Shown piece by piece: positions 26,133 through 62,326 of a stretch of 64,000 nucleotides of DNA (the first letter of the stretch is position 1; the number at the start of each line of letters is the position of its first letter). Location: contig NW_026262637.1 of the NCBI RefSeq assembly GCF_021869535.1, forward strand, positions 1,736,001-1,800,000, read 5' to 3'. The position numbers were made by a program, and so were the translations under genes. The notes below the pieces were generated by a model. It saw only the letters and a list, made by a program, of their open reading frames with translations. It was not told the origin of the DNA and did not search any database. Source of the stretch: Mytilus californianus. Its lineage: Eukaryota.

Positions 26133-26835
26133 GGAAATGGAGGCAAACGTTGATATTGAAAAACAGTTCCTAAGACTGATTATGTTTTGCCATAAGATAT
26201 CCTTACCAGTTGTTAGAACATTTTTTGTAAGTGGTGTTCTTGGATGCCCTGATTATAACAACAACATTAGTACTTTTCTTGAACATCACAAACATGAAAT
26301 ATTTCATCTTGTTGGAGATTATAAGTGTTGTCAATGCACCAATCTGCCTTTATTTCAAACAAGTTCACTTAAATTTCGCCTTGGAAAGGATCAATTCAAG
26401 AAATTATATGAAATTGGGCTTTCACAACCCGGTCATTTTATGAAAGGATCCGGAGGACGAGTTATTCAGCAATGTCTGTGCTGTGTTACAGTTAGAAAAG
26501 AAACAGATCCAAAGACATATGATATATCCTTGTTGTTCGCCATTTTATATAACTGTGTTCAATTATCCGATAACAGAAGATTATGGTTAGATACAATTAG
26601 AAAGGGGAGAAATAGATTATGTCATCTTAATGATATAAACGACCTTTCGGAAAATGAGCTTCAAACATTGTGGGGAAACTTAGAATGTTCTGTTGTTCGG
26701 TTAGCTGAAGAGATCCATTCACTTCCATATTATAAAGAATGCATAGAGCAACACGTTGACACCTTCAAATATACAGACTACAACAGAGAGGCTATAGTTC
26801 CGATTATAGAATCAATGAGATCTGAAATAAACAAT
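26133..26835 (+). CDS. HEPN-TIR-like gene, exon encoding a DZIP3/hRUL138-like HEPN domain (ATG at 26137)
   Basis: 233-codon open frame. FLEHHKHEIFHL..CCQC..H..CLCC, DISLLFAIL, then RKGRNRLCH (R-x4-H HEPN motif, 26608-26625) and LWGNLE. Acceptor TTATTTCAG, donor AAT|GTAAGT (phase 0). Confidence 0.85.
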
Positions 26836-27558
26836 GTAAGTTGTTACAAATAATATTATATCAAAAATTAGAACTTAACAGAATTCACATATTTTTTCAC
26901 GAGTCTTTGGCGTAATGCCAATTCATGATCTAATCTGCGAAATATATATATATATATAAATATGAAAAAGGTGAAAAATATAATAGAAATAAAAAATAAA
27001 CACAAAATCATGTTGTAACGTTTATTTTAAAGCGAGAATGAAGAACTTGCCAAAGACAATAACCGATATAATATTTTATTTGGAGATCAGTTTTTTAAGG
27101 TGCAATTTTGTGTTTTGAACGGTGATAAATATACATTGTTTTTATATTTGAGTTTATTCTTTTGTAGATTTAGTAAAAAGTAAAATAACGTAAATACCAA
27201 ACTCCGAGGAAAATTAAAAACGGAAAGTCCCTAATCAAATGACAAAATCTAAAGCTCAAACAAACAAGCTAATGGATAACAACTGTCATTCCTGACTTGG
27301 TACAGGCATTAACATATGTGATATGGTCCTCGAAGTTTCTATTGTTGAGACATTAACTCTTTGTAGTAATTTTTAGTGGAGGGTTTATTATTTTTATTAT
27401 TATCAGTCTTCGTGTTGTCCAAACTTTAGTTTTCTATGTTTTGTTTTGTGTTCTGTTGTGAGCATGTTGGTCTTTTCATTTTTAGTCATGACGTTGTCAG
27501 TTTATTTTCGACTTATAATTTTGAATGATGCTTTGATATTGTTTTTTTTTTTTTTTTT

Positions 27559-27873
27559 AGTAATTTGAAGTTATTAATATTCTCATAATAACGTTAACGG
27601 TAACAATGTTACTGCACCAGTAAACTTCATCGTATTTTGATTGTTTTTGTTTGTTTCAAAATTCAACTTTTAGTCAGTTTAAATCACAATTTTTTTCAAG
27701 CTGATACATCGGCTACGGGGCATTTGTAACTCATTTATAGAATCCCTTTGTTTTGAACTGTAAGATGGCCTAAACAATAGGATAATCCCTTACTAAGAAC
27801 AAAATTTCATTCATGCTTCACAATTAAGAAACACCAAATCCTACAATTTCATTGGTCGAGAGCACTTTGCTAT
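27559..27873 (+). repeat. Direct duplication, second copy at 28290-28614
   Basis: AGTAATTTGAAG..ACTGCACCAGTA..TTGTAACTCATTTATAGAA..GGTCGAGAGCACTTTGCTA occurs twice, about 730 bp apart. Confidence 0.8.
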
Positions 27874-35653: not shown

Positions 35654-35915
35654 AATATCAATGAGGTCATACAGAATCAAATGATTTCTCAAGAGGAAAT
35701 AAAATGTCTGACCATAAATGTCGAACAACTTTCACAAAACTGTAAGAGAGACAACAAAAATATGTTGAATCACGTAGCAGAATCAGCAAAAACTATTGTT
35801 GATTTACATCAAGACGCGGTTCATCAAGTGTCAGCACAAGTAGCTAAATGCCATATCGAAGAGATAGAATTCATTAAAGATCAGAATAAAGCTGTCATCG
35901 AGTCATCTGAAAAAG
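35654..35915 (+). CDS. HEPN-TIR-like gene exon, helical/coiled-coil segment (NINEVIQNQMISQEEIKCLTINVEQL...SSEK)
   Basis: Acceptor CTATTTTAG, donor AAG|GTAAAA. Phase 0 in, phase 1 out; open frame. Confidence 0.8.
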
Positions 35916-35989
35916 GTAAAATCTCATCAATAATACCAAACTTATCTTTTGGCACGCAATATATGTTTCCGTCTACATGATACTCATTA

Positions 35990-36300
35990 GTTGCAATTTA
36001 AGCAAAACATTAAGCAGACTGAATGAAATACGAATATGACAATTATATGATGCAGTATTAGCAGATTTCATAGGCATTTGATCAGTAGTTGTTATTTGTA
36101 TGTAATAATCAAAAACATACTGAATTCTCTGAAAAGCTTCTGTAAAGCTTCTGAACAGCACTTGAAAGATAATAGAATGATCTGTTGGTATTTCTCTTCG
36201 AAACTCAACATATACTCCCGAGACGCTTAAGTTTAAAATAGAAGTGAAGGAAGCTGTATCTGTGGTTTCTTTAATCTCTACTTCATGAAAATGAAAATAT
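35990..36300 (-). mobile_element. Decayed Penelope-like RT fragment
   Basis: EVEIKETTDTASFTSILNL matches ELEIKETTDTVKAASYLDL in the other copies. Confidence 0.55.
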
Positions 36301-37153
36301 ATTGATGGAAAGACATGGGAAAAAAGCAATAACGTGTTAACTAATAGAACATTATCATTATACTTGTATGTGAAATCAAATGATCTTGGTTATTCGGTTT
36401 TCTTGTTTTTACAAGTGATTAAATGAACTCCGACCCATATAGAATAATAAAAGATCGGACACTCGTCACCAAACAAATAGTTAGGCACAGACGAAATACT
36501 TGAAGGACAAAGTGTAAAAAATATAAATGAACAAAATTAGCATTACAACCATGAAACACATAATGTAAGATATCGTTTGTTATTATTTTCGTGCAGTTTG
36601 CAATATGCATGTCGTACAAGAGCGATAATGACTAGACTTGTTTTCTTTTAAAAAAAATATTAGTGTTAAACTCATTAAAAAGGTTGGTGTGAAATATCCT
36701 TTTGTCACTAATTTCTTACAGTTGGCATCATATTTTTTTCATTTATATCATTTGCTTCAATTATCAATCGTTAAATTTGTAATATTTGGGACCTATTTTG
36801 ACAGTTATATCCCTGCTGTAAAAGTTTAGAGGTTGGTTTTGAAAAATAGAAATAAGAAGATATGGTATAATTACCAATGAGACAATACTCGTTCAGGAAA
36901 CAAATAACATAGAAGTTAATTGTCGCCATACGGCCTCAGACAATCACCAAAACCCATATCGCATGGTCAGCTATAAAGACCAAGAAATGACAACTGTAAA
37001 ACGAGAAAAATTACAAACAGATATATGTACAAAACTATGAACGAAAAACGAACAGGATATTCAGCAACAACTGACAACCACTGACTTGGGACAGGTACAT
37101 ACAGAATGTGACGGGGTCAAACATGTTTAGGGCCGCACAATCCTAAACGAACC

Positions 37154-38289
37154 TTTTTTTTTTTTATAATTCTTTATTTTTTTTTTCAACTCATACAATA
37201 ACTATAAGCATTTTTTCTATCAAAGAAGAATACAATACATGTTTATTTATTTTGACCTGTCAGTGTCAGCGCTTCTATTAACATCCCCCTTCACATACAA
37301 AAAAAAACTAAAAAAACAACAAAAAAAACTAAACAAACAAACAAACAAACAAACAAAAAATCCAAAAAAAAAAAATTAGCTTATATTCATATATGATTGA
37401 ATTGATATTAAAAGATTATTATTATTATTGATGCAACATAGTTATTCTATTCGTACATGTATTCATAAAGAAAATTATATATATAGGGACATACATTTGT
37501 ATTTTGTTGTTATTTTCTTTTCCCGACAATATCTGAAAATCATATAAAAAACAGTATTTTAACTCCTATTATCATAACATAGTAACCCACATTTAATTCT
37601 TACATACATATATATAATATCTATAGGATGCAAACTAACCACTGTCCAATTGTGATGTGCATCCAATTGTGTTACACATTTATTTTCAGTTAAGTATGAG
37701 TTATCTTTCTTGTATCATAAAATTATTTGTTGAAATGGTTCCTATTTTTTTTTCTTTTTTTTCACCTATTGCAGGAGAAATGTGAAAGGTGGAAGATAGT
37801 TTTTCAATAATATAATAATTTTTCAATTTCTTTAGTGCAATCTTAACACAAGGTAACAGTGAGTTCAATCTACAAAAATAAATATAGTACTTCAAGAGAA
37901 CAGTGAAAAAATTTCCATAGATATCTATAATATCTGATCCCAAGAGGATGTTTTGTTTTGATCATTTGTGCATAAAATTCTGTGCAGAATTTTGTATTGA
38001 AAACTGATCAATTTATTACTCAAAGAACACTTGAAGGGATGCATATAGAAAAGATCCCAATGACCTATTTCCATAAGCAAAATTTCTTTCTATTTATTTT
38101 GTTATTTTATGGGGTTTTCATGTAGACACAAATAATTTATAAAAATATAGGCATGATTTCTGATTTGTTTTCAAATAGTCTAAATTATCGCAAGTGATGT
38201 TGATTTTCTTTTCACAGTTTTTGATGTGGTCCTTCCAACTACTTGGGATCATATGATATATACCATAGAATTAAAGAAAATTTGTATTA
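37154..38289 (-). mobile_element. L1/Tx1-clade LINE, 3' part with polyadenylation signal and poly-A tail
   Basis: Minus strand reads FYGIYHMIPSSWKDHIK and VLLKYYIYFCRLNSLLP..LKNYYIIEK, then AATAAAGAATTAT(A)12 ending at 37154. TSD AATCCTAAACGAA at 37139-37151 and 45626-45638. Confidence 0.8.
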
Positions 38290-39849
38290 TTATTGATGCG
38301 CAATGATTAGAAACACGGTATTGGCAGTATTTGGCCACAGCTTTATTATAAAATTATAAACACATATAACTAGGTAAACAGTTAAGATATATATATGTAT
38401 AGTAAATAGATATTTAAATGAACGTAGTCACCTTTCATATTGGCAAACTACGACACGATAACTAGATATTAACTAAATAGATAAATAATTAAGATATATA
38501 ATTTATATAGTAAATAGATAATTAATTAAACGTAGTCACCTTTCATATTGGCAGACTACAAAAAGATAACTAGATAACTAATTATTTACAATAAATGAAG
38601 TATCCAATTAATAGAATCCTGGGAAACAGAGATTTGTTAATTTTTGTGTGGTGGTCCTGGGATACAGAGACCCACAATATCAAATGTTTTGGATGCTAAA
38701 TGAAATATGACGCCAAATAAGCATATTTAAAGGAAACGCAGCGAAATGTGCCCGTAACTAAATATCACTACGGAATGTTCATATAAACCGGCACATTCAA
38801 AAATTGTTCTTCCATGATACATGTACGAACGAAGTCACAGATTACTGTATTTATAAATGTCTAAGAATGAATAGTCTTAAAACACAACACACGTTGAGAT
38901 GGCATAGCTATACTAGCAAACAACGTACAAGTACACTGTAGATAATAATCTGATGTTCCACATATACTGCTTAGTTGACGGTTCATCCAAACTGTTGTAC
39001 AAGGATCATCCTGAAAAATATAGTAAAGACACAGCAAAAATATATTCATGATATATTATGCTAGGTAGTATAAGTCATAGTGGTGGGTGGGTGGGTCTTT
39101 AAATCACCAAATAATATTTCGTCTGTTTCTTTCAAATGTCGGAATGAAAAAGATCGCGTACGCAGTCATATTGCGCATTGACAAACATACATCTGATAGC
39201 CTACATTTAATAGAGGTGAAACAGCTAATCACACAAGTAATCTATGCTTACACTAATTACCGAATTTATGCTGAATCATAAATTCTATCATTATTGATAA
39301 ACAATGATTAGAAACACGGTATTGGCAGTATTTGGCCACAGCTTTATTATAAAATTATAAACACATATAACTAGGTAAACAGTTAAGATATATATATGTA
39401 TAATAAATAGATATTTGAATGAACGTAGTCACCTTTCATATTGGCAAACTACGACACGATAACTAGCTAACTAAATAGATAAATAATTAAGATATATATA
39501 TAGTAAATACATAATTAATTAAACGTAGTCACCTTTCATATTGGCAGACTACAAAAAGATAACTAGATAGATAACTAGATAACTAATTATTTACAATAAA
39601 TGAATCCTGGGAAACAGAGATTCGTAAATTTTTGTGTGGTGGTCCTGGGATACAGAGACACACAGTATCAAATGTTTTGGATGCTAAATGAAATATGACG
39701 CCAAATGACGAATATTTAAAGGAAACGCAGCGAAATGTGCCAAATTGACCAAGACAGTCATAAATGACTGTCAGGTCAACCTCCATTAAAAGCGGATAGA
39801 GCTGCGTAGAAGCTGTGAACCAAATACAATATAAAGGACTCATATATTT

Positions 39850-40420: not shown

Positions 40421-40524
40421 TGGCGAACCTGCTAATTTTACATAACGGCTAGTATTACTAATGTAATTGCAAGTTCTAAACATAAAATTAGAAAAAATTC
40501 AAACAGTTATACCCATTGTTGTAT

Positions 40525-45625: not shown

Positions 45626-46633
45626 AATCCTAAACGAATCTTGGACAGTGGTGTAACAGCAAAACATATGATTAAACTATAAAAACAGTTGAAAGGTTTT
45701 AACTCATCAGATCGACACAAAGCAGAAAAAACAAGTAGCAAAAACACAGACCGGACGTGGCAGGGTATTCACACAACATCAAAAGCTGTGTGCATTTGTG
45801 AGAATGCTCACACTGAAGCTAGTTCAAAGCCAATAAGAACTAATAAAACATCATGAATCTAAGACTAAAATATCAATCAGTACACATCCAACATACAGTG
45901 AATTTAGTATAAAGACGTTTTTAACAGTCAGATAAAAAGATGACCTTTTGCAATGGCAAATTACAGGTATCAACAGATTGTAGAACCGTGAATGTGCATA
46001 TGTATATAACAATAATATTTAGTTTGCTTTTAATTTATTGATAACCAAATCAATATGTAAATCAATAAAAACTGTTTCAAATATCTAATCACAATGTTGA
46101 ATTGGTAACCTCACAAAATATGTTTATCTAAAGGAAAGATAAGTTTACACGTATCTTCTTTAAGTTTACGGGGTCTGTAAACAGCATGTCTGTAAAAATA
46201 AGAATGTGCTATCCCGTTTGAAATAACTATGTGTTGATCATTAATACACCAACTTCTTTTTAATCATTTAGAGGACAGGATGCACCACACGGAGAGTAAA
46301 AAACAAATACGTCGAAAAGAACCTCGAATAATTCTGCCGACGAAAAGACATACGACAAAAAATATTGTCAGGAAATTTCTTATTGGGCAATGAGTTTCTA
46401 CCAAAGAAAGAGGATACTCCAGATAAGCGTTTTTGATTAAGGTTAATCTGGAAAAGCGATTCGGATGCACGATAGTATTATTTTCATTAACCTCATTTAT
46501 TAGATTCTAATTAATATATCCAAAATAATTGGTCTTTGGTCTAGCGAAGCTGTAATAAACATACGTTTTATGTGTTATATATTTAACTATGTAAAGTACC
46601 TTTCCTTAGAACCTTATATGTATCTAGTTTCAG

Positions 46634-46735
46634 GAACAATGGATCATGTCATAGAAAAATTGAATTTTCTAGTCGATATAGCTATAGACAACAAGAAATA
46701 TCAACACACAGAAAACGACAGTACTTTACCAAAAG
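46634..46735 (+). CDS. HEPN-TIR-like gene exon (GTMDHVIEKLNFLVDIAIDNKKYQHTENDSTLPK)
   Basis: Acceptor TAGTTTCAG; phase 1 to phase 1. Donor is either G|GTGGTC (46735) or T|GTACGT (46744), both phase 1. Confidence 0.7.
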
Positions 46736-47353
46736 GTGGTCAATGTACGTATATCATAACAAACTTATTTACCTTTTTTATTGAAGTACCATATGACAAT
46801 GATAAAAAGGCGAAATATAAGTACATTTTTATTTTTGAACGGCTTTTGTTATGAAGAAAAAGAATTATTTGTTAACCTCAAATCTTAAGTTTGTATGACA
46901 GCTTTTTCTTTATTATTGTTTTGTCATTTAGCATCCATTGCCTGTCATATAAATTGTACTTTTTTACTGATTGATCCTTCCATGCATTTGAGACAATGCA
47001 TCTTATGAACTCTATATACTTTGCTGTTCAATGATTCTACAAACAGAGCTTGTTTTCATTAAAACATTAACCTTATCTTTTCCTGACACAATAATGTACT
47101 TTATGGATTAGTTAATGATTAATTTTAGAAAATTTCCTGTGTCAGTGTTGAAAGATGTTTTTTTGGAAAATACGTGTGATACTTCATAAGTTATCAAGAA
47201 ATACACATTTTAAAATTTAATCGTAATCATGTGTTTTGCTAATGATTGTTAAACAATAATCAACAAGTTATTTTAATTATTTAGTTGAGCGTAAACGTAA
47301 GAGGGAACAATTTGAATTACACTACATACTATTATTACAATTGTTCATTACAG

Positions 47354-48290: not shown

Positions 48291-48715
48291 GACGAAAGAT
48301 ACCAGAGGGACATTCAAACTCATTGATTAATGTACATAAGAATACAGGACTTCTTGAACAAGTGGGCAGGCACAATGACCTTGTCATTTTAAGGATGCAG
48401 TGATCCATTTTGTCCATACAAGGAGTAAAGGACTGAAAACAGCGTATAATACAAAATACTAAATTCTAGTAATGAAATTGATATGATCCACGCTAAAAGT
48501 ATGCATTGAAAAATCATATTTTATTTTGATATTATGATTAGCCAAAGATATTTGATTCACAAGAACACTTCAAAACAGGCTAAAGGAAGAAAAATATTTA
48601 GACAGTCTTGGTTATGCATTGTAAAGTCTATACGTTTCAATAAATTGAATTATTTCCCTAGCGTTTATTTGCTGTCTTTTAAAACATGAAATTAATATTC
48701 TGAATTATCTTTTAG

Positions 48716-49027
48716 ACATAGAGCGCTGTAAGTTACATTGGAGGATAGAGACCCCAGAATATCTGGAATATAAAAAGGATGATATCGTGAAGGCAATGAA
48801 AAATGCGATTGAGATTGTGAAAATAGGTACCTGTCATGAAATTGAAGACATCAATGAGGGCTCTATAACTATTGATACATTACTTCCAATCAGTATACTA
48901 CAAGACGGAAAAGCATTTCATCATTCCATTCGAAAATTTTTGGATGCAATGGTCAGCATTTGTGGGATAGACACGAGTATTCCATTAGAAGTAAAGGTCC
49001 AGATTACTTTAATTGACCAGGAACAAG
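48716..49027 (+). CDS. HEPN-TIR-like gene exon, about 104-aa alpha/beta domain (CKLHWRIETPE..INEGSITIDTLLP..IRKFLDAMVSICGIDT..VKVQI)
   Basis: Acceptor TATCTTTTAG, donor AAG|GTAAAT. 312 nt, phase 1 to phase 1, open. Confidence 0.8.
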
Positions 49028-51559
49028 GTAAATTATCACATATATTGGTTTTTTTTATAATATATTACCCAACAAAAATTTTGTGGATCGCTTGACGTCC
49101 AAAAATAAAGATCGTTCTCACATTGAGTGTTACTTAAATATAATTATTTCTAACATTACGCTGAAATGATCAAATTCAGATTTCTATCTGAACTTCTGAC
49201 ACACATTTTGGTAAGTTGATTGACCAGTTCATGGGTTAGAATTACTACACAAGCGGTAGTTCAGACATATTGTGTGTATAAATTAGATCGAATATAGGCA
49301 TCAACAGGACGAAGAAGATAAAATATGGTCAAGAACAGATGGAATAACGAGAAATAAATTATTCATTGTATATGTAGTTTCTAATCTCTTTGTATTTCAT
49401 GTTAGTGGTTGATGAAAAGATATTGTTGATACTTTCACAGTATAGCTCTTATCTATTTATACATTCATGTGTTCAGAATAACATTTTGTTTCATTTTTTT
49501 TTATATTCAAACAACATCTTTTTTAGAGAAAAGAGTTTTCGGAATACTGGCCATTTATAATTAAACATCATTACGTTTTTTGAATTGAAAACTGATGGCA
49601 TTTGTTAATTTTCTTTGAAAACATAAATTAACTGCTTTGAACTTTCAAATATGTGCACAAGTGAAACAAAGATGCACATAGTCTACATTTCCTCACGGTA
49701 TATTCTTAATACTGTATGCTTAAACACGTAATTACCAGGTTCGTCTAGTGGGTGTTTCGTTCCTGAAAGTATCACTTACCAAGTAGTCAGCATTTGTATG
49801 TACATGTACTGTACATATAATGTTGAATTATTCGATACACATAGGTTTACCTCCTTCATAGGCATAGATTGCTTTAAGCGTGTTAGTTTCAGAATTATCG
49901 GTTTTTGAAATGCGCTTTATCTTCGTATGTGATTTTGCTCTCAAACTGTTTTGATTAGAGCGCCAATGCTGAGTCTGATGGACGAAATGCAAGCCTGGTA
50001 TATGTCGTGATGTTTTACAATCACTTGGTCGATTCCACTGTTGGTGAATGATGCGTTCCCAAGGATATCACCAGCCTAGTTGTCAGCATTTTTGTGTCGC
50101 GATTTCATATGTTCTTTTTCCTTAGATTTACTGTTGAATTATTTGACAAATTCAACCTGCAGGCAAACGTTTTTTAGCTCTGTTTGGAATTGTCTACTTT
50201 CTATACTCTTCAACATAGTTTTTTATTTGGCCTTTTGATTTTTTTTATTCGAGCCCACTGCTCAACTTTCTGCAGACGAACAGCGTGTCTGATGTATCAA
50301 TTTTAACAACCTCAAAACGGTGTCATATTCTTCAATCTGTGTCAAGTCGAAATGACATTCGTCAACATATGTCTGTGTTAAAATATTGCTTCTTCAAATC
50401 TGTGTTCAATAACGTCGTTTACAAATCTATGATGAAAGTGAAACCGGCAGTCCCCTGTCATCGTTTGTTTTTGTTGAATTTTTTACCTTGAATTGGTTTA
50501 CTTGACTTGCTTATGAATTCTTTCTATTAACTGTTTAGCCACATTTTGTTTCATGCTGCAATGTATAGATATCTCCACAAACCTTGTTATGATCCTGTTT
50601 ATTTTATTTTTTTTGTAATGATTAGTTTTTGCCTTTCTTTCTTTATCATTGACATTATCAGTTGGAATCTGAACAAGAGAACAAATATAAAAATAAAATG
50701 ATGTGGTTTGACAGCTCTCCACACGAGACCGAATTGCATAGGAATTAACAACTATAGGTTACCGTACGGCCCTACACAATGAGTAAAACCCATTCCGCAT
50801 AGTCAGTTTTAAAAGGCCCCGTATGACGTCGACAAATGTAAAACAATTCAAACGAGAAAACTTACGGCCTGATTTATGTAAAATATAATGCACGTAAAAC
50901 AATCAACAGCAACAAACGGCAACCACCCAAAATTCCGTATAACTATTGTAATGACATTCTTTTTTTAAAGAACAATTTGCTGATTTCGCTCGGCGAAATA
51001 ACTCATGAACAAAACATTAAAATGTAGATTTCAAGAAAAAAAGAGCAAATTAATTTTAAGTATAAATTCATGTGGCCTAAACAGGAAGCAATCATCTGGC
51101 GTAGCTTGATAACATTACATTTAAATCTCAATGTTCTATGATTTTGAATATTGTTTAGACAAAAACAAATCGAAAATGAATTAACAACTAGTGTGGTCTC
51201 GAATGAATGGTGCATAATGGTATATATGCACTTCAAAAGGAGAGAAACGGGATGACTTGGTTAGTTGAGTTAAATCAAGGCACAAATATTCAACCGATGT
51301 TCGAAACTCATAAATCAGTAAGGAATCAATCGGTGAAATGACATAAAAGACGACTTTTCTATTATGTAACGAAAACATGTCGCCAGTGAGTTAGATTATG
51401 AAGGAGATACAATGGATTAGCTTTGGCTTGTTTTTACGATACAACACTTATGACACGTATAGAAGGACACGCTGACCATGTCAATTTACACGGTTTTGTT
51501 CCTTTATAGATTCATATGATGAACTCAATTTATGTTTGTAACTTGGTATGTCTGTTACT

Positions 51560-53070
51560 ATTCTTTGTGCGAGATTTGAACATCGATAAACTACTGTTAA
51601 AAGTGTCCTTAGAAACAACGTTATATTGCTGGGTCTTCCAAGTGCTCCACGTAACCTCTTTCTAAATCAAAAACATCAATTTTATCAGCAATCAAAGCCG
51701 CGCTTAAAGGTTATTGTGAAACCACATATTCTAGAGGTGGCGTTAATACTAAAAAATCCCAAAGATCTGTTATAGTAAATGCAATCTAAGTCTTTTTCAC
51801 CTGCAAAAGTATTAAAACATATGACTTTTCTACACTTTACATAAGTATTGGCCATTCCAAACGCAATGGCGAATTGAAAGGGTTATGCCTGTTTTGTTTA
51901 GTAAAAAAGAATAGCCAACAACGATACAAGTATCTTGTCTTAGGGAGTTAGAAATCGTATTTTGTAAAAAAAAAAAATCACCCTGATTCAAACAAACAAA
52001 ATCTTTGAAACTGATATATGCATTATCACGATGCTTTATTTCTTGATTGACAACATATTTATTACGTTTTGAGAACTAGTTCTTGAAAAAACAATCGGCA
52101 TTCCCATAGGAACCAGGTGTGCTCCTTATCTTGTCGAGTTGTTTCTTTATTCATATGAGGCAGACTTCATATAAGTACTTCTTATGAAGAAAGAAAATAA
52201 GTTAGCCGTATCCTTAAACTATACTTTCCGCTATGTTTGCCGTTTTTTTCGTTTTGAACATAGATTAGACCGTTGGTTTTCCTGTTTGGATTATTTTACA
52301 TTAGTTATTTTGGGGCCCTTTATATCTTGCTGATCGGTATGAGCCAAGGCTCCGTGTTGAAGGCAGTACTTTGACCCATATTTTTTTTATTTTTACACAT
52401 TGTCATTTGGATGGAGAGTTGTTTCATTGGCACTCATACCACGTCTTCTTATTTCTATATGGTTGATGTTTTCTCAAAATTTGGTGACTATGCTAAAAAC
52501 ATCTATCCCAACGAACTTGAGATAAAGGAAACTACAGATACAGTTAAGGCTGCATCATATCTTGATTTACATCTAGAAATTGACACGAGGGACGGTTGAT
52601 AATAGAAATTACGACAATAGGAATGATTTCAACTTCCCAGTTATGAACTTTCCATTGCTATCTAGCAACATTCTAGCAGCGCCTACATACGAAGTATATA
52701 TCTCCCAGTTGACACGACATTAAAGGGCTTGTATTTCCTCTCATGATTTTCCCGATAGAGTGTTTATGCTAACTAGGTAGCTATATATTATACCGATAGT
52801 TCCAGGTGAGTGGTGAGGTTAAACGCACCCTTTCGTTCATTTTACGGACAACATAACGACTTGGATGACCTAAATGAATGTCCATAGAAAATAGCGGATA
52901 GGTTCAAATTGTCATCAATTCAATCTTGTCCTGCTTTCCCCGAATGTTACCTACCGAATTAGACTTATGACTTGGTTTGCCCTAAAATGAGCAACATGAC
53001 GGTAGTCACATGTGGAGGAATATCTGCTTACCCTTCTGGAGCACTTGAGATCACCACCAGTTATTGTTTG
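51560..53070 (+). mobile_element. Penelope-like RT fragment, heavily mutated, with a family-1 repeat inserted at the YxDD motif
   Basis: FLIDNIF..IGIPIGT.CAP.LV.LFLYSYEADF..TFRY | insert about 52235-52455 | (M)VDV..IYPNELEIKETTDT..SYLDLHLEID. Confidence 0.75.
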
Positions 53071-53079
53071 CTTTGTGAC

Positions 53080-53760
53080 AAGAATCTATGACAAACAAGA
53101 TGATTTTAATTTTGAAATTATCAATTTCCTCAACTTAGTAGCAATATAACAACTTGACCTGCGTATGGGATATATATTTCCCTAATTATTCGGTATTCAA
53201 GAGCTTAAAGCTGCTACTCAGACTTTGTAAAACGTCACCAGTATCTGAGTAGAAAGTTAATGAACCAGGGGTATGTCAAAGATCGTCTCGTCCTTTTTCA
53301 TAGGAAGGAACCAAGACCTTACTGATAAATATTCCGTATCAACTTCACAAAAAAATACACGATGGACTTGAAGTATAGATTTTAGACACTGACGTTGTTT
53401 ATAATCTTAATAACGTGTTATAGTATTCTTTTGTTTGTCTTTATGCATATTACTTTTACTGTTTATTCTGTTTTGGTGATATTCATTTGACGTTGCTCTG
53501 TACGTATACATCCAGTCATTGTGTTATTGTGCTATGGTAAATTTGTGTATTCTTGTCTTTCATTTTTGCTAATGTACTTTGTTTATATGCCTTGTTGTGT
53601 TTCTTTGTTACATATGACGTGGCTCTGTACTTATACATCCCGTCATTGTGTTATTGTGCTATGGTAGATTTTTGTATTCCTGTCTTTCGTTTTTACTAAT
53701 GTGCTTTGTCTATATGCCTTTTTTATGATTCTTTGTTACATAATTGTTTCTTTTTATAGT
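53080..53760 (+). mobile_element. Another Penelope-like C-terminal fragment with a duplicated ~125-bp 3' unit
   Basis: IYDKQDDFNFEIINFP..AYGIYIS. GTCATTGTGTTATTGTGCTATGGTA repeats at about 53515 and 53641. Confidence 0.6.
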
Positions 53761-54825
53761 GATGAAGGTTATAACACAATAATTTAATGGTGGATGTAAC
53801 ACGTCTTCTAATTGGCTGAAAGTGTTTTGTCTATCAGCTCAAATATAATTTTGTCATTTGACCGTGACGTCACCAACGTTTTTTTTCAAAATTTACTCCT
53901 TAAAAATGGAATTTAGAATTAAATTATAAGGAATGATTCAAACATTTTTTCTGTCTATTCGAAATAACCTAAACAATGTGGTGCACACTTTTTAAATAAC
54001 CCGCTACGCGGGTTATTCAGTGTGCACCACATTTTTGCTGTTATTTCTTCATAGACAGAAAAAATATTACATTTACCTATCATGGTTTTTTGTTTTGTTC
54101 ACACATCGTTGTCAATATTATGCGACTGTCATACAAGTGAGAGGTTTAGCTAGCTGTAAAACCAGGTTTATTCTATCATTTTTACATAAGAAAATGCCTG
54201 TATCAAGTCAGGAATATGATAGTTGTTATCCATTCGTTTGAAGTGTTTGAGCGTTCGGTTTTGCCATTTGATAAGGGACTTTTCGTTTTGAATTTCCCTC
54301 GGAGTTCGGTATTTTTGTAATTTTACTGTTTTGTAAACTGTTGTTTTGTCCTGGCTTTTTTTTTAGCCATGGCGTTGTCATTCTATTTTTGACTTAACAG
54401 TTTGAATGTCCCTTTAGTATCTTTTGCATCTCTTTGACGTCGAATTTCACAATTTCAGTTTTTGTTTTCATTTTTAAAGCTCTATTTTGCAAAACCAACA
54501 TTTTCATTTTGAATACTAAAGTAATGCACTAAAAATAACCATTTTTAAGATGTATACAGTTATTGGAATAAAATTATAAATAAAATCAGACGTATTTTAA
54601 TATGTTTTTAAAATACTCAAATGTACCTTGAAAGAGGGGCGAAAGATACAAGAGGGACATTCTATCTCATAGATCGAAAATAAAATGACAACGCCATGGC
54701 TAAAAAATGAAAAAGACAATTAGACAAATAATAGTACACAAGACACAACATAGAAAACTAAAGCTAATGATTACGAAACTGACAATTATCTGCAATTTAC
54801 AACTAATGGCATATGCAAACTTCTT

Positions 54826-55287
54826 CTAAAGTAGGAATACATGTTTGTTAAGATTTCTAGGAAGAAACAGAAATCGAGCAACGTCATGATTTACACTCAT
54901 AGAATTTTGACTTGCATTTGTAATGATGTATTTTGAAATATACGAAATCACTCTAAATAAATATGAATTTAGGTGTTTGACGCGCTTTTCTTCCTTAACT
55001 TCCTTCAGGAACGATCCACGACAAAAGAATGAAAACCCATGATGTATATGTACCTTAGCAAATAACAAACAACAACAAAAACGCAGAAACTGATCATTTT
55101 CATTGAAAAAAGAACAATGACACAAAATGAATTTTAAAAAACCGGGGTAACAAAGTAAACAGTTTAAAAACAGACGGGGGTCTAATAAAAGGCTAAACCT
55201 TATATTACAGCTCATTTTAACATTGCCGTTACTACCTTCTACACGCGTATGTTTAAATATATATTTGAGGATACAAGCCCTATGCAT
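54826..55287 (-). pseudogene. Antisense intronic ORF, Cys-rich and hydrophobic; possible membrane-protein relic
   Basis: 153-codon ORF in non-repetitive sequence. Protein-like residues continue past the TAG (KKFAYAISCKLQIIVSFV) until a repeat insertion. Product not recognised. Confidence 0.3.
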
Positions 55288-55699
55288 CTTTTGATTGGTG
55301 TTTATTATATTTTCAAATTAGTCATGTTCATAAAATTGTTTACTGACAACGTTAATTGGCATTCATCATTTTACAAATAATCAAAGATGACAAGCTGATA
55401 GTTTTGTACACTGGACGCACGTTTCGTCTACACGAGACTCTTCGAATTCGGTGGCGCTCGTTTAAAATTAGTTGGAAGGCCAACCACGGTGTTGTGAAGC
55501 TATAAAAACCTAAAATAATCTACATCTTGGTGTAGAAACACCTTAGTGTTTCGAACACACTGAATTGTTTGAAAAGCTAACGAACAGTGCTCCAATTGAG
55601 TTTTCTGTACAGTACGACATTTCTAAACGAACTCGATAAAATCTGAAAAATAACTGAAATTATGTTTGTTGTTCAGACGTTTCAGATCATGTTTAGCTC

Positions 55700-56462
55700 A
55701 AAAAAGTAGGGCGAAAGATACCCGAGGGACATTCATACTCATAGATCGAAGAAGGGTAAGCAGATCCTGCTCCACATGTGGCACCCGTCTTGTTGCTCAA
55801 GTTATTACAAACCCGGTTAATAGTCTAATTCGGTAAATCACATTCGTGAAATGGGAACGGGATTGTAGTTATGACATAAGGAATATATCCGATATCATCT
55901 GTGAAACGGATATTCCATGACGGTCAACCAACCCGTGATGGCGTCCGTAAAATTTACGAAGGGATGATTTCAACTTCAACATTTGGAACTCTTTGTTTAA
56001 TAGCTTCCTTGTGAGCAGCAACCCTCTATCAAGGACATCATGATAGGAAATACAAGCCCGATAATATCGTATCAATTGGGAGATATATGCTCCGTATGCA
56101 GGCGCTGCTGGAATTTTGCTACATAGAAATGGAAAGTTCACAATTGGGCAGCTGAAATCATCTCTTTTGTCGTAAAGTATTGTTTTCAAGCGACCCTCAT
56201 TGTCAATATCTAGATGTAAGTCAAGATATGAGGCAGACTTAACTGTATCTGTTGTATCCTTTACCCCTAGTTCGATGGGATAGATGCGTTCAACATAATC
56301 ACCAAATTTTGAATTATTTAGTGAGAGAACATCATCTATGTAGCGGACACTAAAGTTTAAGGATATTGCTAACTTCTTTTCTTTGTTCCTAAAAGTACCT
56401 GTATGGAGTCAGCCTCATAAGAATACAGAACAAGTCGGCAAGAAGAGGGGCACAATTGTGAC
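55700..56462 (-). mobile_element. Penelope-like RT 3' half, 5'-truncated
   Basis: CAPLLADLFLYSYEAD, RYIDD (56331-56342), SYLDLHLDIDNEGRLKTILYDKRDDFSCPIVNFPFL, RKFYGRHH. Confidence 0.85.
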
Positions 56463-57829
56463 TGTTTCAGATTAATGTTTGGGTTGGTTAGCATTCGATA
56501 GCAGTCACTATATTATTGATTAACGACTGTTGCTATTGATAATTTCAAATCTTCATAGCAGTTTGAACTTGAATGCAATGTTTATACGTTCGTTTAAAGT
56601 GTCATTTGTATGCAAGAGTGACATCCATTTGCACTAAATCAAATTCGAACAAGTCTTTCGAATCAATGACTTTTTTAACTGCCTTGAACAGGTTCATTAT
56701 TTCAATTTTACATAATTTGAGTCCACTTTTTTTAGAAACTTAAAACATAATTCAAATGTTGTAGTGACAAATTATGAATGACACCAGCATTAAACATTTG
56801 AACATTTGTTTGAAAGACTTTATCATAGAAAAAACAATACCGACAAAGGAACAAGAGTAATCTAAAATTAATCATCAAGTATGGCTACGGACGCACGAAA
56901 TTTATAAAATGTTGTTTACATTTTTTATGTCTATTTGATTTCCTTTAGATTGCATCATAAAAACTGTTTTTGTTTCCTTCCACTAAACTTTTTTTTAAAC
57001 ATGAGATTATCCTTAAACTTTTTAAAGTTATATTCGTTTTCTGAAATAACTTATCAGTGATATACGTAAAAGACATGACCTGAGACTGTATTCTTTAATG
57101 AATAATAAAACAAGATTAACTATTTGATGAATTTTATGGTGCATTTTGTGTATATCATTTATCAAAATGCAAATTATAGTTTGTCAGATTGTGTGTTAAA
57201 CACAGATTTATCCATATAGATACATATCTCACCTCTGTTAAGTAGTGCAAAATATGTTTCGAATGTGGCTTTCTCTAAGTTCGAAAAATTACACTTCAAA
57301 ATGAGTTTTTTTTTTCTTTTTTCCGTGAGCGGCACTTTCCATTTAAATCAAGAAGTCTTAAGACCAAAGCAAATTATTAGAAAAATATTTTCATAAAAAC
57401 CGATATCGTAAAAAATATATAACAAAAATACAGAACTCCAAGGTAAATTTAAAAAGGAGGAAGTCTATAAAAACTGACAAAATCAAACGTTAGAGTAAGT
57501 CAACATGATTGGTAGGAATGGAAAGCAACTGTCATATTCCTGAATTGGTACTTGGATTTTTAATAAGACAAATGTGGGTTACACTTGGTTGTATAGCTAG
57601 CTAAAGCTCTCATTTGTATAACAGTTGATCATAGTTCCGTTTTTATTGACAAAATTGGGTATGCAACCCAAACAGACATAATACATTTGTAGCTTAATGT
57701 GACTATATTTGGGATCCAGCAGCAAACTGTAAACATACTTCACAGACATACAACACCAAAAACTGAAACTTCCAACATACCACCAAATCTAAAGACGCCA
57801 ACAAAAAAGTTTTGAAGGTTGTTAGTACA

Positions 57830-58430
57830 TACCGTACATAGTTTACATATAGGTTCCCGATAAAGTACAACTTAAGGAAATAATAAAGACAAGGATAAAC
57901 AAAATGAAAACAACATTGTTAAAACCTGTTCCTTCCAGATCACCACTCTGGACCATCCTGATAAAGGAACGTCCAAAGCCCAAAACATATACTTTTATAT
58001 AAAGGATTATCTTTGTGGATTTTTTCGTCTTTGTCAGATTTATTTGTATATGTGCTTGCATTTTGAAATTCAGAAGTAGGTGTAATACCACCATTGATTT
58101 TCCTAAATTGTCCTTTGTTAAATTTGCACTTTTCAAAAAATTTTCAGGAATATATCTTTGTTTCAAATAAAGAAATACTTGGCATGAGTTAAGTTTATTA
58201 TCCTGTCCAGTTCTATAGACAAAATATCACATAACATTTCATTGTATATAAGAAAATAACCATCACTGGAAGTTAACCAATCAAATGTTCACCTTTTTCT
58301 ACCTGTGTACAAGCTTTAGTAACCATGTAACCTCAAGTTTCCAAAATATTCTATAGTAACACCGAATAAAAAATAATGGTGCTTTGAAACAACCAAGATA
58401 TATGTTGATGACCCAGAAATTTTTTACTGC
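57830..58430 (-). pseudogene. Possible two-exon antisense pseudogene fragment of a multipass membrane protein
   Basis: Acceptors TTTCTTTGCAG and TTTGTCTATAG, donors CAG|GTAGAA and CG|GTATGT. One frame reads ..SWLFQSTIIFYSVLL*NILE.. and ..ICFGLWTFLYQDGPEW*..VYPCLYYFLKLYFIGNLYVNY, with several stops. Confidence 0.3.
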
Positions 58431-59864
58431 AAAGAAATGTAGGATTAATTTTCTACAACTGTCAATTTCAAGTGCATATTTTTTTCGACCCTTTTTCGTA
58501 TGCAACCTGATATGACGTATTATGATTTGGTGGTGTAACACCAAGTACCGTATATCTATGATGTATATTTACACAATTTTGACTCCTGTGTACAAAAAAT
58601 GTATCATGAGTACGTCTGTTTTGGTTTATCACTTCATTTTGTCAATATAACTGAATTATTAACAATTGGCATACAAGTTAGAGGTTTATGTTACTAAACA
58701 TCAGGTTTTTTTTCGGAAATGCCTGTAAAAAATCAGAAATACTGCTGTTGTTTTATAATTTATTCCGTCTGTTAATATAGTCGAACGTTTGGCTGGTAAA
58801 TTTAAAGCAGAACCAGCATCAGATCTTTGAATTGGGGTGATAAATTCCCCATTTTAGAATAATTCTTAAAAAAAACGTTTATGCGAACACCGAATGGACT
58901 AGTGATACCATTTGGGATCTTTCATTCAACTACAAAAAGTACTACCTCAGTGGTAGTTATGCTATTAACGGTGTCCTTTTAACTGCATCAGATATGCATT
59001 TCGACTCTTTAATGATGCCTGAGGTCAAATCAAACGTTCAAAAGCTTCTAGAAAAAAAAACATAAGAACAAATGTATATCCAATCATGAACAAAGAATCC
59101 GAGCCTTGCATGTAGGAGATACGTTCCATTATTTTAAATTTTGTTTCTGATTTTTTTACAGCAAATTTCAAATAAACTATATCCGTATATTCATGCAAGA
59201 TAAGTATTGGGTATATTGCAGCATACGAAAAGACAAACAACAGAACACAAATATACAACATGGGGCTTTTCTCATTTTATAAAAAAAACCGGGCTAAACT
59301 CAGGACTCTTACAAGGTATTCAGTCCTTGCTAAAAAAAAAGTGGCACATGATGTGTTAATCTGTAAATTGTTTATTTTCAGAACAATTGTTTAATGCAGA
59401 TAACATGAAACGTCCTTTTTGGTTGGTAACATGTGTTGTCAATTATACGGTTGATGATCTGAATCATTAGGTACAACGTTATGCAAGCGCAGTTGACGTG
59501 TCCGGATAATTCTAATGATTCATTCTAATCTTTTCAAAAAAAATGGTCTCAATTTGTCAACTACAGTATTGTTATTCTTCAATTCAGTATAAGTATCTCG
59601 AAGCTTAACACATTGCCTTTTTTGTGTTTGGTATTCTTAAAATACATATTGTTCTTTTCCGAGTATTATTATACTCCAAATGTCTGCAAACTTTGTGTAA
59701 TGATCCCCAAAGTAACCATTACTTTATTGTCGCTGATATAAACGAAAAATACATAGAATTTGTCATATTCATGGACCTCAATGTATGCTCTCGATTTTAT
59801 ATTCCACTATTTAAGTGTATCATATTTTCATTAACCAGGTTCATAAGTAGCTTTTTTATTTCAG

Positions 59865-60023
59865 GGTCGGTTAGATATTCCATTGATGAGATTAACCACA
59901 CAACAACGATTAATCGAGCTGTACAAGCTGTACCAACAATGATTGATAGAAGCACTACAGCAATTGAAAGTCCAATCAATGAAACTACTGACAATCCAGA
60001 TTGCATCGAAAGAGAAGTTGGCG
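59865..60023 (+). CDS. HEPN-TIR-like gene exon, Thr-rich linker (GSVRYSIDEINHTTTINRAVQAV...EREVG)
   Basis: Acceptor TTTTTTATTTCAG, donor G|GTAACA. 159 nt, phase 1 to phase 1. Confidence 0.6.
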
Positions 60024-61882
60024 GTAACATATAGACAATACTTATTAATAAGTTTGCAAGAAATATATCATGCATTAACATGTCAATCGCACATTTGTTT
60101 GGGTTTCATTTTTAAGATTTTTATGACATTTGAACTTAGCCTGACATAGATGGAAAATACAATGGTTCCAAATGTAATTTTGATAACAAATTTTTACAAA
60201 AATTCTGAATAAAAGAGATATTAGGACAACGATTTCAATAATCTAAATCTATGACTTTCATGTTTTTTTCTAACCGAAACCGTTATCCCACTTCATTTGC
60301 ACTACTATCATATAATGTGTGTTGCTACTAATAACCAAAGTTGACTGTTAAATCCATATGCCGATCATTCATACAACAGCCATTGGTTTAGAGGGGGGAA
60401 AAAAGACTCATCAAAGATGCCAGGCTTATAATTTGATACGCCAGACGTGCATTTCGTATAAAACATGGAATCGTCTAAAAAATGATATCGTCTTCACAAT
60501 TGGCAACGACCAAGTTGTGGCTAAAAAAAATCTCCGAAAATAAAGAGGCTTTTCATTACGTTTGCCAGATGCTCGTTTTATCACAAATAACTCAACAGTG
60601 ACGCTCAAATCAAAAAATTTGAAAAGTGAAATTAAGTACGAAGTTTAAGAAGAATTAAGGGCCCAAATTCATATTTAATTTGCCAAAGACGGCTCAGGTC
60701 ATTTGACATTCATCTATGTATCTAAAATAAAAAGTAGTAAACAAATATTCAATAATTAGGTTATAACTCCATATATAACACAGACGAAAAAACGTTCAAT
60801 ATTCCATCTTAGGTGAATCAGAGGTGTAAGAGAAAAAAAAAGTCTCTATTCGACCAATTATTGAATTTATCAAGGCAAAAAAAAAAGGACAACCTCTAAG
60901 CAAATAAGTTAAAAGAGTCTTTACAACGACACATAGCAAAGCGTTTCTTCAGGTGCTTTTCTTGATTTATCTTAATCAGGAACACTCAAAGCCAAATATT
61001 TGAAAGCCAAGGAAGCATAAATACCAAAACACGTAAAGAAAATAATGACCAAAAGGACATCTAAAAATCAGGCTGCAAAACAAAATACATAGTTCATATA
61101 TTCACAGCATACACAGCATGTATTTTAGGAAGACCAGTTTGACCAAATTTATAAACAAATACTACATTTACAACACAATACTACAAATTTAAACATTTGG
61201 AACAATGTGACTTTAGCATATCTATGGTAGCTGTTTTTCACTTGTTATATTCATTTATAGCGTTTGATTTTGTCAGTTTATGTAGACTTCCCCTTTTTGA
61301 AATCGATTTGGAGTATATTTGCTATACTTTTTACTAGTATAATGTATAGTATGATTTGCAACTTTAGAAACGGTCACCTGCGATGTTTTGAATATATATC
61401 TTTCTTCCTTTGTATATATGGATATAAACGTTTAAGTATTTTGACTCACATATGTTTTACTTTAAAGAGACTTGATAAATTGTTTACCTGTTGCACACAC
61501 TGATATCTTAAAATATGGTAATGTAGGATGATTTTGTCTGTTCTAAATGGTTTACGAATATCTACGATTTCTTCTCTTCACGTCGAACAATGACTAAATT
61601 TCACAGTGAAGCCAACCTCTACCATGCGAGCACTATTTCATTAAGAGTCAATTTTCGGAGATTATCATTGAAGATAATAAAAATAAGATCAGTTGCGTGC
61701 TAACAGTTTTTGAGATACACAATCAAAATGTAAGAATGTTCTTTGCTAGTTAAAATCTAGATTGACATTCTTCAAAATGGAAATTGATTCAGACATTTGT
61801 TTTCACTGTACACGAATACATATCTATATTTTCTTCTTTTGTGTTATTGTAGTACTAATGGTGTATAGTATGAAGATTAAAG

Positions 61883-62326
61883 ATAATGCATTGATTCCAC
61901 CTTCTAAACTGCCATTTTTTCGTACCAATGATGATGACAGCAAAGGGATAACGATAACGAATCTCGATCATACAAATATGGTACTACTGGGATGTTTCGA
62001 TGATGTAGAGTGGGTTGAATCAATATTAACTGTTTGTGAAAGTCTTACACCAATTTGTCAGATACAGAACACAAAAATGACAAAAAAGCTTCTCAACCAA
62101 GTGAAACATATTGTATTTGTTGCTTCTATGTCATCACAAGAATCTTATAATCTAAAACCATTGCTGGAATGTCTCAGTGAGTCTAAACTGTTACCAAAAA
62201 AATTCGTTACAATAAAAAGGGATCACATTATGCTTCCAGATGTGTTGAAAAAATCAAAACAAATCAGTATTAGTGTTGTAGAGAAAGAATGGGTTTCTAA
62301 CGTGATGGATGCTATAGCTATGACAG
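61883..62326 (+). CDS. HEPN-TIR-like gene exon, degenerate TIR-like domain
   Basis: MVLLGCFDDVEWVESIL..E, IVFVAS..S, FVTIK..I.LPDVLK and EWVSNVMDAI follow the TIR beta/alpha pattern. Donor CAG|GTACGT (phase 1). Phase-1 acceptors exist at 61853 and 61883. The next exon was not found. Confidence 0.65.

What the first reader, a model, noticed from the sequence alone, without database searches (positions are those of the whole stretch)
26133..62326. Candidate innate-immune fusion gene: HEPN nuclease + helical stalk + unnamed alpha/beta domain + TIR-like domain
Seen: seven exons with GT-AG ends, compatible phases (0, then all 1) and no internal stop. Established: HEPN domains with R-x4-6-H are metal-independent RNases used in antiviral and toxin systems (RNase L KEN, Cas13, abortive-infection proteins), and TIR domains act as immune adaptors or NADases. 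Inference: this is a single signalling-coupled RNase, an animal analogue of the HEPN/TIR combinations in prokaryotic defence. I know of no described protein with this order of domains. The gene continues past 62326.
Basis: partly seen in the sequence, partly recalled or inferred. Interest (0 to 1): 0.8.

Follow-up and report, generated by a model that had tools for sequence, protein, structure and literature searches.

The report
Mussel HEPN gene with seven TIR-like repeats
A mussel (Mytilus) locus encodes a predicted RNA-cutting HEPN head of a large, already known bivalve immune-type family, most likely joined in one gene to seven tandem copies of a mussel-only domain that folds like a TIR signalling domain. 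The pairing is unusual, and the join itself is not yet proven.

Summary
The exons are real. Transcript contigs from public runs splice the linker exon to the 'TIR-like' exon exactly at the predicted sites.

- **Exon 1:** a DZIP3-type HEPN domain with the R158-x4-H163 motif intact.
- **Exon 1, a Pro/Gly-free helical exon and a ferredoxin-like exon:** together these form an N-terminal cassette, the HEPN and ferredoxin-like exons recurring together at 20 or more other loci in this genome. Annotated Mytilus relatives fuse it to RIG-I-like helicase, Death, OTU, B-box/NHL and STAND domains.
- **The 'TIR-like' exon:** it has no sequence match to TIR. Its moderate-confidence model finds TIR domains first in three structure searches.
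- **New here:** this exon is the first of seven diverged tandem phase 1-1 exons that run 38 kb past the window. The domain occurs nowhere else in the genome and only in close relatives.

No read was laid on the HEPN exons, so the join of HEPN cassette and TIR-like array in one mRNA is inferred (about 70-75%). It rests on contig lengths, boundary bases and exon phases.

The scan noted another HEPN-TIR fusion elsewhere in this genome. Verdict: a new variant of a known kind.

The parts
26133..26835 (+). Exon 1: 4 nt of 5' UTR, then ATG at 26137 and 233 codons. DZIP3-type HEPN domain with the RNRLCH motif (R158-H163) and a conserved Cys/His cluster. Donor AAT|gtaagt, phase 0.
   Evidence: Sequence read. 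Pfam HEPN_DZIP3 E 7e-4, below cut-off. 19 of 30 relatives hit the family. Motif position and conservation. At least 86 paralogous exons in the genome. Homodimer model score 0.36 against best control 0.06.
35654..35915 (+). Exon 2: 87 codons plus 1 base, phase 0 to 1. Predicted helical or coiled-coil stalk.
   Evidence: Acceptor tattttag| and donor AAG|gtaaaa. No Pro or Gly in 87 residues; chance of an open frame 9.5e-4. Relatives have 70-100 residues between the HEPN and alpha/beta domains. No direct homology or RNA evidence.
46628..46744 (+). Candidate extra stalk exon: 117 nt, phase 1-1, donor GTACGT. Uncertain.
   Evidence: Best-scoring phase-compatible exon in intron 35916-48715 in my own splice and codon-usage scan. 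No homology or RNA evidence.
48716..49027 (+). Alpha/beta exon: 312 nt, phase 1-1. Ferredoxin-like domain that is the third part of the family's N-terminal cassette.
59865..60023 (+). Linker exon: 159 nt, phase 1-1. Ser/Thr/Asn-rich and probably disordered.
   Evidence: Splice sites. Covered by X1 and X2 contigs up to its boundaries and spliced to 61853 in an X2 contig. X1 contigs carry 1731 and 1220 nt upstream of its acceptor.
61853..62326 (+). Repeat exon R1: 474 nt, phase 1-1. A variable 35-40-residue lead-in, then a 120-residue TIR-fold domain. It is the first of seven tandem repeat exons. R2-R7 lie outside the window at C57:1802485-1802946, 1805884-1806318, 1817348-1817755, 1830448-1830870, 1832632-1833069 and 1835481-1835912.
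   Evidence: Splice sites. RNA contigs in X1, X2 and X6, with the donor at 62326 in use. Seven copies and no more in the genome. AlphaFold pLDDT 62, pTM 0.60. TIR domains top three structure searches. No Pfam or profile match to TIR.

Best explanation
This is a Mytilus-specific member of the bivalve DZIP3-like HEPN expansion.

**Layout.**
- The family's conserved N-terminal cassette comes first: a HEPN RNase domain with Rx4H and a Cys/His insertion, a helical stalk, and a ferredoxin-like domain.
- Phase-1 introns join it to a short linker.
- A private array of seven tandem exons follows, each encoding a diverged TIR-fold domain.
- The protein would have at least about 1500 residues.

**Proposed mechanism (inferred).**
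- The HEPN head is the effector. Like other HEPN RNases it needs two heads side by side, and the stalk and the predicted homodimer interface would provide that.
- The TIR-fold array is the regulatory or assembly part. It would act as a scaffold that clusters with itself or with TIR adaptors, or as a set of variable decoy surfaces.
- Clustering would bring HEPN heads together to cut viral, transposon or host RNA.
- NADase activity of the repeats is unlikely for most copies, because no acidic residue is invariant among them.

**Shown:** the exons, their phases, splicing of linker to R1, use of the R1 donor, family membership of the head, the fold resemblance of the repeats, and the fact that the repeats are unique to this locus.

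**Inferred:** that head and array share one mRNA, that all seven repeats are included, and every biochemical activity.
For: **Exons**
- Canonical sites and matching phases.
- All 11 located exons are open in a genome where a stop is expected every 13 codons.

**HEPN head**
- Pfam HEPN_DZIP3 hits in 19 of 30 relatives.
- R and H of the RNxLxH motif each kept in 26 of 30.
- Relatives are named 'DZIP3-like HEPN domain-containing protein' in Mytilus.
- The homodimer model passes its mark: score 0.36, best control 0.06. That mark was reached by 21 of 30 solved homodimers and 0 of 23 solved monomers.

**Cassette used as an N-terminal module**
- The HEPN and alpha/beta exons lie close together (2-20 kb) on the same contig and strand at 20 or more loci.
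- Annotated Mytilus proteins carry the cassette before RIG-I-like helicase (P0149, P0191), OTU (P0157), Death (P0160), B-box/NHL (P0057, P0074) and nSTAND3-ankyrin (P0048) domains.

**TIR fold of the repeats**
- Foldseek: 10 of the top 11 hits are TIR, TM 0.51-0.58 for the MyD88 rows.
- ESM Atlas: 9 of 10 rows are TIR_2/TIR clusters, TM 0.54-0.59.

**One long transcript**
- An X2 contig of 4072 nt splices linker to R1, with 212 nt upstream and 3224 nt downstream. R2-R7 sum to 2598 nt.
- X1 contigs have 1731 and 1220 nt upstream of the linker acceptor. Exons 1, 2 and alpha/beta sum to 1277 nt, or 1394 nt with the candidate exon.
- The contigs match two bases ('AG') before the linker exon, and the alpha/beta exon ends in AG.
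- The contigs match one base ('G') after R1, and only R2 among R2-R7 starts with G.
- No credible coding exon lies between 49028 and 59864.
Against: - No read or contig was laid on exons 1, 2 or the alpha/beta exon, so their expression and their join to the linker exon are not shown.
- The boundary-base matches are weak evidence, because many exons end in AG.
- A raw-read RNA run of the same species label (X9, about 6% sampled) gave no reads on the linker or R1 exons.
- No long protein with a close copy of exon 1 turned up among 1.84 billion cluster representatives. The best hits were 67% (272 aa) and 51% (249 aa) identical, and the one I read (P0001) ends in genomic read-through. So no public gene model supports the fusion.
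- Sequence comparison with TIR fails: hhalign probability 0.3%.
- The predicted dimer interface (residues 16-32 and 195-214) does not name the R158/H163 helix.
- The 3' end of the gene was not found.
Confidence: 0.6

Rival explanations
1. There are two genes. An ordinary roughly 450-500-residue HEPN-coil-ferredoxin-like gene ends shortly after 49027. A separate gene made only of the linker and the seven TIR-like exons starts from untranslated exons between 49028 and 57500.
For: - Many relatives with the cassette are only 456-513 residues long (P0012, P0014, P0020, P0084, P0148, P0152).
- The repeat domain occurs with no other HEPN gene in the genome.
- The linker exon has an in-frame ATG that could start translation (sequence).
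- The join was not observed.
Against: - The alpha/beta exon ends at a good phase-1 donor (CAAG|gtaaat) with a stop 21 codons into the intron. The short relatives continue past this point with coding tails.
- X1 contigs carry 1220-1731 nt upstream of the linker acceptor, which is long for a 5' UTR and close to the summed HEPN-cassette exons.
- I found no exon-like stretch in 49028-59864.
- No contig piece or joint into 59865 lies within 57500-59862.
Confidence: 0.2
2. The gene is one unit, but the seven homologous exons are used as alternatives, either as mutually exclusive or variably included cassettes. Each isoform would then carry one or a few TIR-like domains. This would be a way of diversifying the C-terminal module.
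For: - All seven exons share the same phase (1-1) and conserved acceptor and donor contexts, so any subset splices in frame.
- They have diverged to about 25% identity, as expected for functionally distinct alternatives.
Against: - The base after R1 in two contigs is G, which fits R2 and none of R3-R7.
- The X2 contig has 3224 nt after R1, enough for all of R2-R7 (2598 nt) plus a tail.
- I saw no docking or selector RNA structures, and I did not look for them.
Confidence: 0.12
3. The repeat domain is not a TIR relative. It would be a new or unrelated three-layer alpha/beta (flavodoxin-like) domain that merely resembles TIR in a mediocre model, with no link to TIR signalling or NAD cleavage.
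For: - No Pfam hit, hhalign probability 0.3% against the genome's own TIR domains, and no language-model neighbour.
- No Foldseek match at E <= 0.001.
- No conserved catalytic Glu or BB-loop-type motif in the 14-sequence alignment.
Against: - Three searches with different aligners and libraries all rank TIR families first, covering 110-126 of the roughly 120 core residues.
- The strand and helix order matches TIR from beta-A to alpha-E.
- The partner domains seen in this gene family are those of innate-immune proteins.
Confidence: 0.25

Closest known systems
DZIP3/hRUL138-like HEPN domain proteins of bivalves and cnidarians (Pfam PF18738; Anantharaman et al. 2013, PMC3710099; Takeuchi et al. 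2022, PMC9646362)
   Same: - N-terminal HEPN head with the Rx4H motif and Asn after the Arg.
- Large lineage-specific expansion: at least 86 exons in this genome, and 202 proteins in the diploid pearl oyster genome.
- The head sits in front of immune-type domains.
   Different: - The partners listed in those papers are NACHT, Death, CARD, ankyrin, TPR, RING and LRR. The passages I searched name no TIR or TIR-like array.
- Exon 1 itself scores below Pfam's cut-off.
- The coil plus ferredoxin-like extension of the head is not described in the passages I read.
Mytilus HEPN-cassette proteins annotated as RIG-I-like/DDX58, OTU-, Death- or B-box/NHL-containing (P0149, P0191, P0157, P0160, P0057)
   Same: The same three-part N-terminal cassette (HEPN, helical stretch, ferredoxin-like domain) followed by a variable C-terminal module.
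   Different: Here the C-terminal module is seven copies of a domain with no Pfam family, found only at this locus.
TIR domains (MyD88, SARM1, plant RPP1/RPS4, bacterial TIR_2/ThsB)
   Same: - The predicted fold and secondary-structure order match.
- TIR domains give the best structural matches in three libraries.
   Different: - No detectable sequence similarity.
- No invariant Glu at the NADase position and no recognisable box motifs.
- Seven copies in tandem in one gene.
Prokaryotic HEPN and TIR defence effectors (Cas13, Csm6, Abi HEPN proteins; Thoeris ThsB, TIR-APAZ, Cat1)
   Same: They share the logic of an RNase effector with an assembly-prone TIR-type module in an immune context. Cat1 and TIR-APAZ are among the structural matches.
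   Different: This is an analogy only. There is no evidence of common descent of the combination, and this is an intron-rich animal gene built by exon shuffling.

Membership tests
HEPN_DZIP3 (PF18738) | Score over Pfam's gathering cut-off (27 bits) | tested here: not met
   Exon 1 scores 19.7-19.8 bits, E 7e-4. By transitivity it belongs. 19 of 30 aligned relatives match, the best at 2e-9. P0048, whose N-terminal HEPN passes at 31.2 bits, aligns to exon 1 residues 11-229 at E 4e-11.
HEPN_DZIP3 (PF18738) | Rx4-6H motif, usually with Asn after the Arg | tested here: met
   R158-N-R-L-C-H163. R, N and H are each kept in 26 of 30 relatives.
HEPN_DZIP3 (PF18738) | All-alpha HEPN fold | not tested
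   Both structure-prediction jobs went to the other two domains. The complex run folded exon 1 at pLDDT 76-79, but I made no fold search. A profile search of PDB sequences found nothing.
HEPN_DZIP3 (PF18738) | Metal-independent RNase activity | not testable with these tools
   Needs a recombinant protein assay.
TIR / STIR superfamily (PF01582, PF13676) | Sequence or profile match to a TIR model | tested here: not met
   No Pfam TIR hit for any of the seven repeats at E <= 10. hhalign of the 14-sequence repeat profile against 12 TIR domains of this genome gives probability 0.3%.
TIR / STIR superfamily (PF01582, PF13676) | Flavodoxin-like five-strand fold with TIR domains as nearest structures | tested here: met
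TIR / STIR superfamily (PF01582, PF13676) | Conserved catalytic Glu of NADase TIRs | tested here: inconclusive
   The 14-sequence alignment has no invariant acidic residue apart from the near-invariant D152 in the last helix. The E-rich stretch after the third strand varies between copies. I had no residue-level structural alignment.
TRADD-N (considered for the alpha/beta domain, because HEPN-Ig-DED-TRADD-N proteins are reported in oysters, PMC8195603) | Match to the Pfam TRADD_N model or to the TRADD structure | tested here: not met
   No TRADD_N hit in 34 family members at E <= 1. TRADD is not among the top 50 structural matches, which are generic ferredoxin-like proteins.

The most novel reading that the evidence does not exclude
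A single protein of about 1500 or more residues couples a dimerising HEPN RNase head to seven tandem copies of a TIR-fold domain. That domain arose, or diverged beyond recognition, within Mytilus and exists only at this locus. The array would work as a built-in TIR assembly platform or as a set of decoy surfaces that switches the RNase on. It would be an animal counterpart of assembly-activated prokaryotic defence nucleases, and a case of a young immune domain family created by exon duplication.
Probability: 0.4. Interest if true: 0.7.

Novelty: new variant of a known kind. Interest (0 to 1): 0.55.

Why it matters
Bivalves carry huge, fast-evolving families of HEPN-headed proteins that nobody has tested at the bench. 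This locus offers three things.

- **A defined module.** The HEPN, stalk and ferredoxin-like cassette is reused in front of RIG-I-like, Death, OTU, TRIM-like and STAND modules. That marks it as a general effector or adaptor head.
- **A rare architecture.** The head is paired with seven TIR-fold domains, so it can be tested whether TIR-type assembly controls an animal HEPN RNase.
- **A young domain family.** The repeat family is confined to one locus in one genus, which makes it useful for studying how immune domains are born by exon duplication.

If the two halves prove to be separate genes, the interest drops to an ordinary HEPN family member next to an orphan repeat gene.

Tried and rejected
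- **Searching for a full-length public model.** The word-based protein search only sees proteins of 0.55-1.75 times the query length. I put longer relatives first in alignments with the window's exons. The words were drawn from the first sequence, so only that protein's own relatives came back.
- **Exhaustive search with exon 1.** Most hits are about exon length, and the top three, which I read, are of that kind (P0001 ends in intron read-through). The longer hits are more distant relatives, not a long close relative.
- **tblastx against the neighbouring paralog.** Transposon matches swamped the output. Only exon 1 and the alpha/beta exon were shared.
- **P0033's C-terminal domain.** It looked TIR-like by eye but shows no similarity to R1 and has no Pfam hit.
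- **Language-model search of a repeat.** Noise only, with scores of 0.81.
- **PDB sequence search with the HEPN profile.** Nothing real.
- **Ab initio scans for further exons.** I scanned between the repeats and for the terminal exon and found nothing convincing, so the 3' end is open.
- **A processed retrocopy that would reveal the mRNA.** I judged it absent, because R1-like sequence occurs only at this locus.
- **Raw reads of run X9.** No reads on the linker or R1 exons at 6% sampling. This is not evidence of silence.
Full report
**Setting.** The window is 32% G+C. It lies on contig C57 (1736001-1800000, + strand) of a 1.65-Gb assembly in 175 contigs. Relatives of the encoded proteins are all named from Mytilus species. 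Earlier notes of the scan call the genome the California mussel.

**Checking the exons.** I read the sequence around each long open stretch.
- Exon 1 has acceptor ttatttcag|GGAA at 26133, ATG at 26137 and donor AAT|gtaagt after 26835, giving 233 codons in phase 0.
- Exon 2 is 35654-35915, phase 0 to 1.
- The alpha/beta exon is 48716-49027.
- The linker exon is 59865-60023.
- The 'TIR-like' exon is 61853-62326.
- The last three each begin and end in phase 1.
- From the window's base composition a stop is expected in 7.7% of codons. Open frames of these lengths are improbable by chance: 8e-9, 9.5e-4, 2.6e-4, 1.6e-2 and 3.5e-6.
My scan for phase 1-1 exons with good splice sites found one candidate, 46628-46744. 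It found nothing convincing between 49028 and 59864.

**RNA evidence.** Only one reads call of at most 6000 bases was allowed, so I laid four runs on 57500-63400.
- Contigs of X1 and X2 (libraries not on record) cover both the linker exon and R1. Contigs of X6 (an RNA-seq library) cover only R1. In each case coverage runs up to the exon boundaries, with no depth in the neighbouring intron bins.
- A 4072-nt X2 contig joins 60022/23 to 61852/53 over a GT..AG intron. It extends 212 nt upstream and 3224 nt downstream.
- Two X1 contigs carry 1731 and 1220 nt upstream of the linker acceptor.
- Another X1 contig runs 428 nt beyond the R1 donor.
- Both exons are therefore internal exons of a long spliced RNA.
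- All three contigs that reach the linker exon match two extra bases, AG, before it, and the alpha/beta exon ends in AG.
- Both contigs that leave R1 match one extra base, G. Of R2-R7 only R2 begins with G.
- Exons 1, 2 and alpha/beta sum to 1277 nt, or 1394 nt with the candidate exon. This fits within the 1731 nt and leaves a few hundred bases for a 5' UTR.
- These facts fit one gene but do not prove it.

**The HEPN head.**
- Exon 1 hits Pfam HEPN_DZIP3 at 19.8 bits, under the 27-bit cut-off.
- An exhaustive search found 140 relatives. Of 30 that I aligned, 19 hit HEPN_DZIP3, the best at 2e-9.
- The motif RNRLCH occupies residues 158-163. R, N and H are each kept in 26 of 30 relatives.
- A set of His and Cys residues (H53, H57, C64, C65, C67, H100, C113, C115) is conserved even more strongly. 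This suggests a zinc-binding insertion.
- The genome holds at least 86 paralogous exons.
- A homodimer prediction passed its mark, with score 0.36 against a best control of 0.06. That mark was reached by 21 of 30 solved homodimers and 0 of 23 solved monomers. On animal proteins the test is weaker. The interface uses residues 16-32 and 195-214.

**The cassette.**
- The alpha/beta exon has 24 paralogs. Most sit on the same contig and strand as a HEPN exon, 2-20 kb from it.
- Annotated Mytilus proteins show HEPN, about 70-100 helical residues, then this domain.
- Exon 2 has no Pro or Gly in 87 residues.
- With 34 sequences the alpha/beta domain models at pLDDT 83 and pTM 0.73 as beta-alpha-beta-beta-alpha-beta.
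- Pfam finds nothing in any of the 34 members, including TRADD_N.
- The cassette precedes very different C-terminal modules in relatives: RIG-I-like helicase, OTU, Death, B-box/NHL and nSTAND3 with ankyrin.
- It behaves as a portable N-terminal head.

**The TIR-like part.**
- A search of the whole genome with R1 found weak matches only downstream on the same strand.
- After fetching 100 kb more, an iterated search found seven copies. A profile search of the genome found exactly these seven and no others.
- All seven are whole multiples of three bases (408-474 nt) in phase 1-1. Five of them share the acceptor context attgtag|, and six of the seven have a |gtaag donor (R1's is gtacgt).
- They are only 22-26% identical to R1, yet all are open.
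- Only seven related proteins exist among 5.8 billion, within the 86-275 residue range that this search could see. All are short Logan contigs of close relatives, and all end in intron read-through.
- Pfam finds no family. A profile-profile comparison with twelve TIR domains of this genome's Toll-like receptors gives probability 0.3%.
- The AlphaFold model made with 14 sequences is moderate: pLDDT 62, pTM 0.60, and about 70 in the core at residues 41-157.
- Even so, TIR domains lead in every structure search.
  - Foldseek/PDB: MyD88 at E 0.03 and TM 0.51/0.56, then SARM1.
  - ESM Atlas: 9 of 10 rows are TIR_2/TIR clusters, TM 0.54-0.59.
- I accept a TIR-like fold and reject family membership by sequence.
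- No acidic residue is invariant where NADase TIRs have their Glu.

**Gene size.** The located exons total 4504 nt, or about 1500 residues. The 3' end was not found.

**What is known.**
- DZIP3-type HEPN expansions in oysters and cnidarians are described, with fusions to NACHT, Death, CARD, ankyrin, TPR, RING and LRR (PMC3710099; PMC9646362; PMC8260672).
- HEPN-Ig-DED-TRADD-N proteins are reported in Crassostrea (PMC8195603).
- None of the passages I read describes a HEPN head with a TIR or TIR-like array.
- The scan itself noted a HEPN fused to a TRIF-like TIR on another piece of this genome (s1-318101). I did not test that claim.

**Verdict.**
- The domain reading is right for HEPN and right at fold level for TIR.
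- The single-gene claim is probable but unproven.
- The real extra is the sevenfold, locus-private TIR-fold array.
- I rate it a new variant of a known kind.

Noticed in passing
window 26137-26835 (residues H53, H57, C64, C65, C67, H100, C113, C115): A Cys/His cluster in the HEPN exon is invariant or nearly so in 30 relatives. It is more conserved than the catalytic Rx4H motif, which suggests a zinc-binding insertion in this HEPN family.
   Followed up: partly
outside the window: C57:1725093-1725779 (-) and C57:1720717-1721037 (-); loci L002, L014: The closest paralog (43% identity in both the HEPN and alpha/beta exons) lies head-to-head about 36 kb upstream of exon 1. It has no TIR-like exons.
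   Followed up: partly
window 59863-60004: Run X1 holds two contigs over the linker exon, one with 1 mismatch and one with 9 mismatches in 142 nt. This means two divergent expressed alleles or haplotypes, or a paralog missing from the assembly.
   Followed up: no
window 57500-58680, 60258-60454, 60849-61045, 61243-61439, 62819-63015: Intronic repeats carry very high summed contig depth, in the hundreds to thousands, at 90-95% identity in all four runs. These are transcribed high-copy transposon families, not part of the gene.
   Followed up: no
window 38290-44411: A retroelement fills much of the intron between exon 2 and the alpha/beta exon. Another note of the scan calls it Ngaro-type. I did not examine it.
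   Followed up: no
proteins P0149, P0191, P0193, P0200 (Mytilus RIG-I-like receptors): Annotated mussel RIG-I-like helicases carry HEPN_DZIP3 where vertebrate RIG-I has CARDs. At least P0149 also has the ferredoxin-like domain, and several others have an Ig domain.
   Followed up: partly
window 52375-52596 (+), 55869-56189 (-) and the fetched flank at window coordinates 64004-64975 (locus L019 4-975): Recurrent transposon-derived open frames, with motifs such as ELEIKETTDTA and FPFLCSNIPAAPAYG, recur in several introns of this locus.
   Followed up: no
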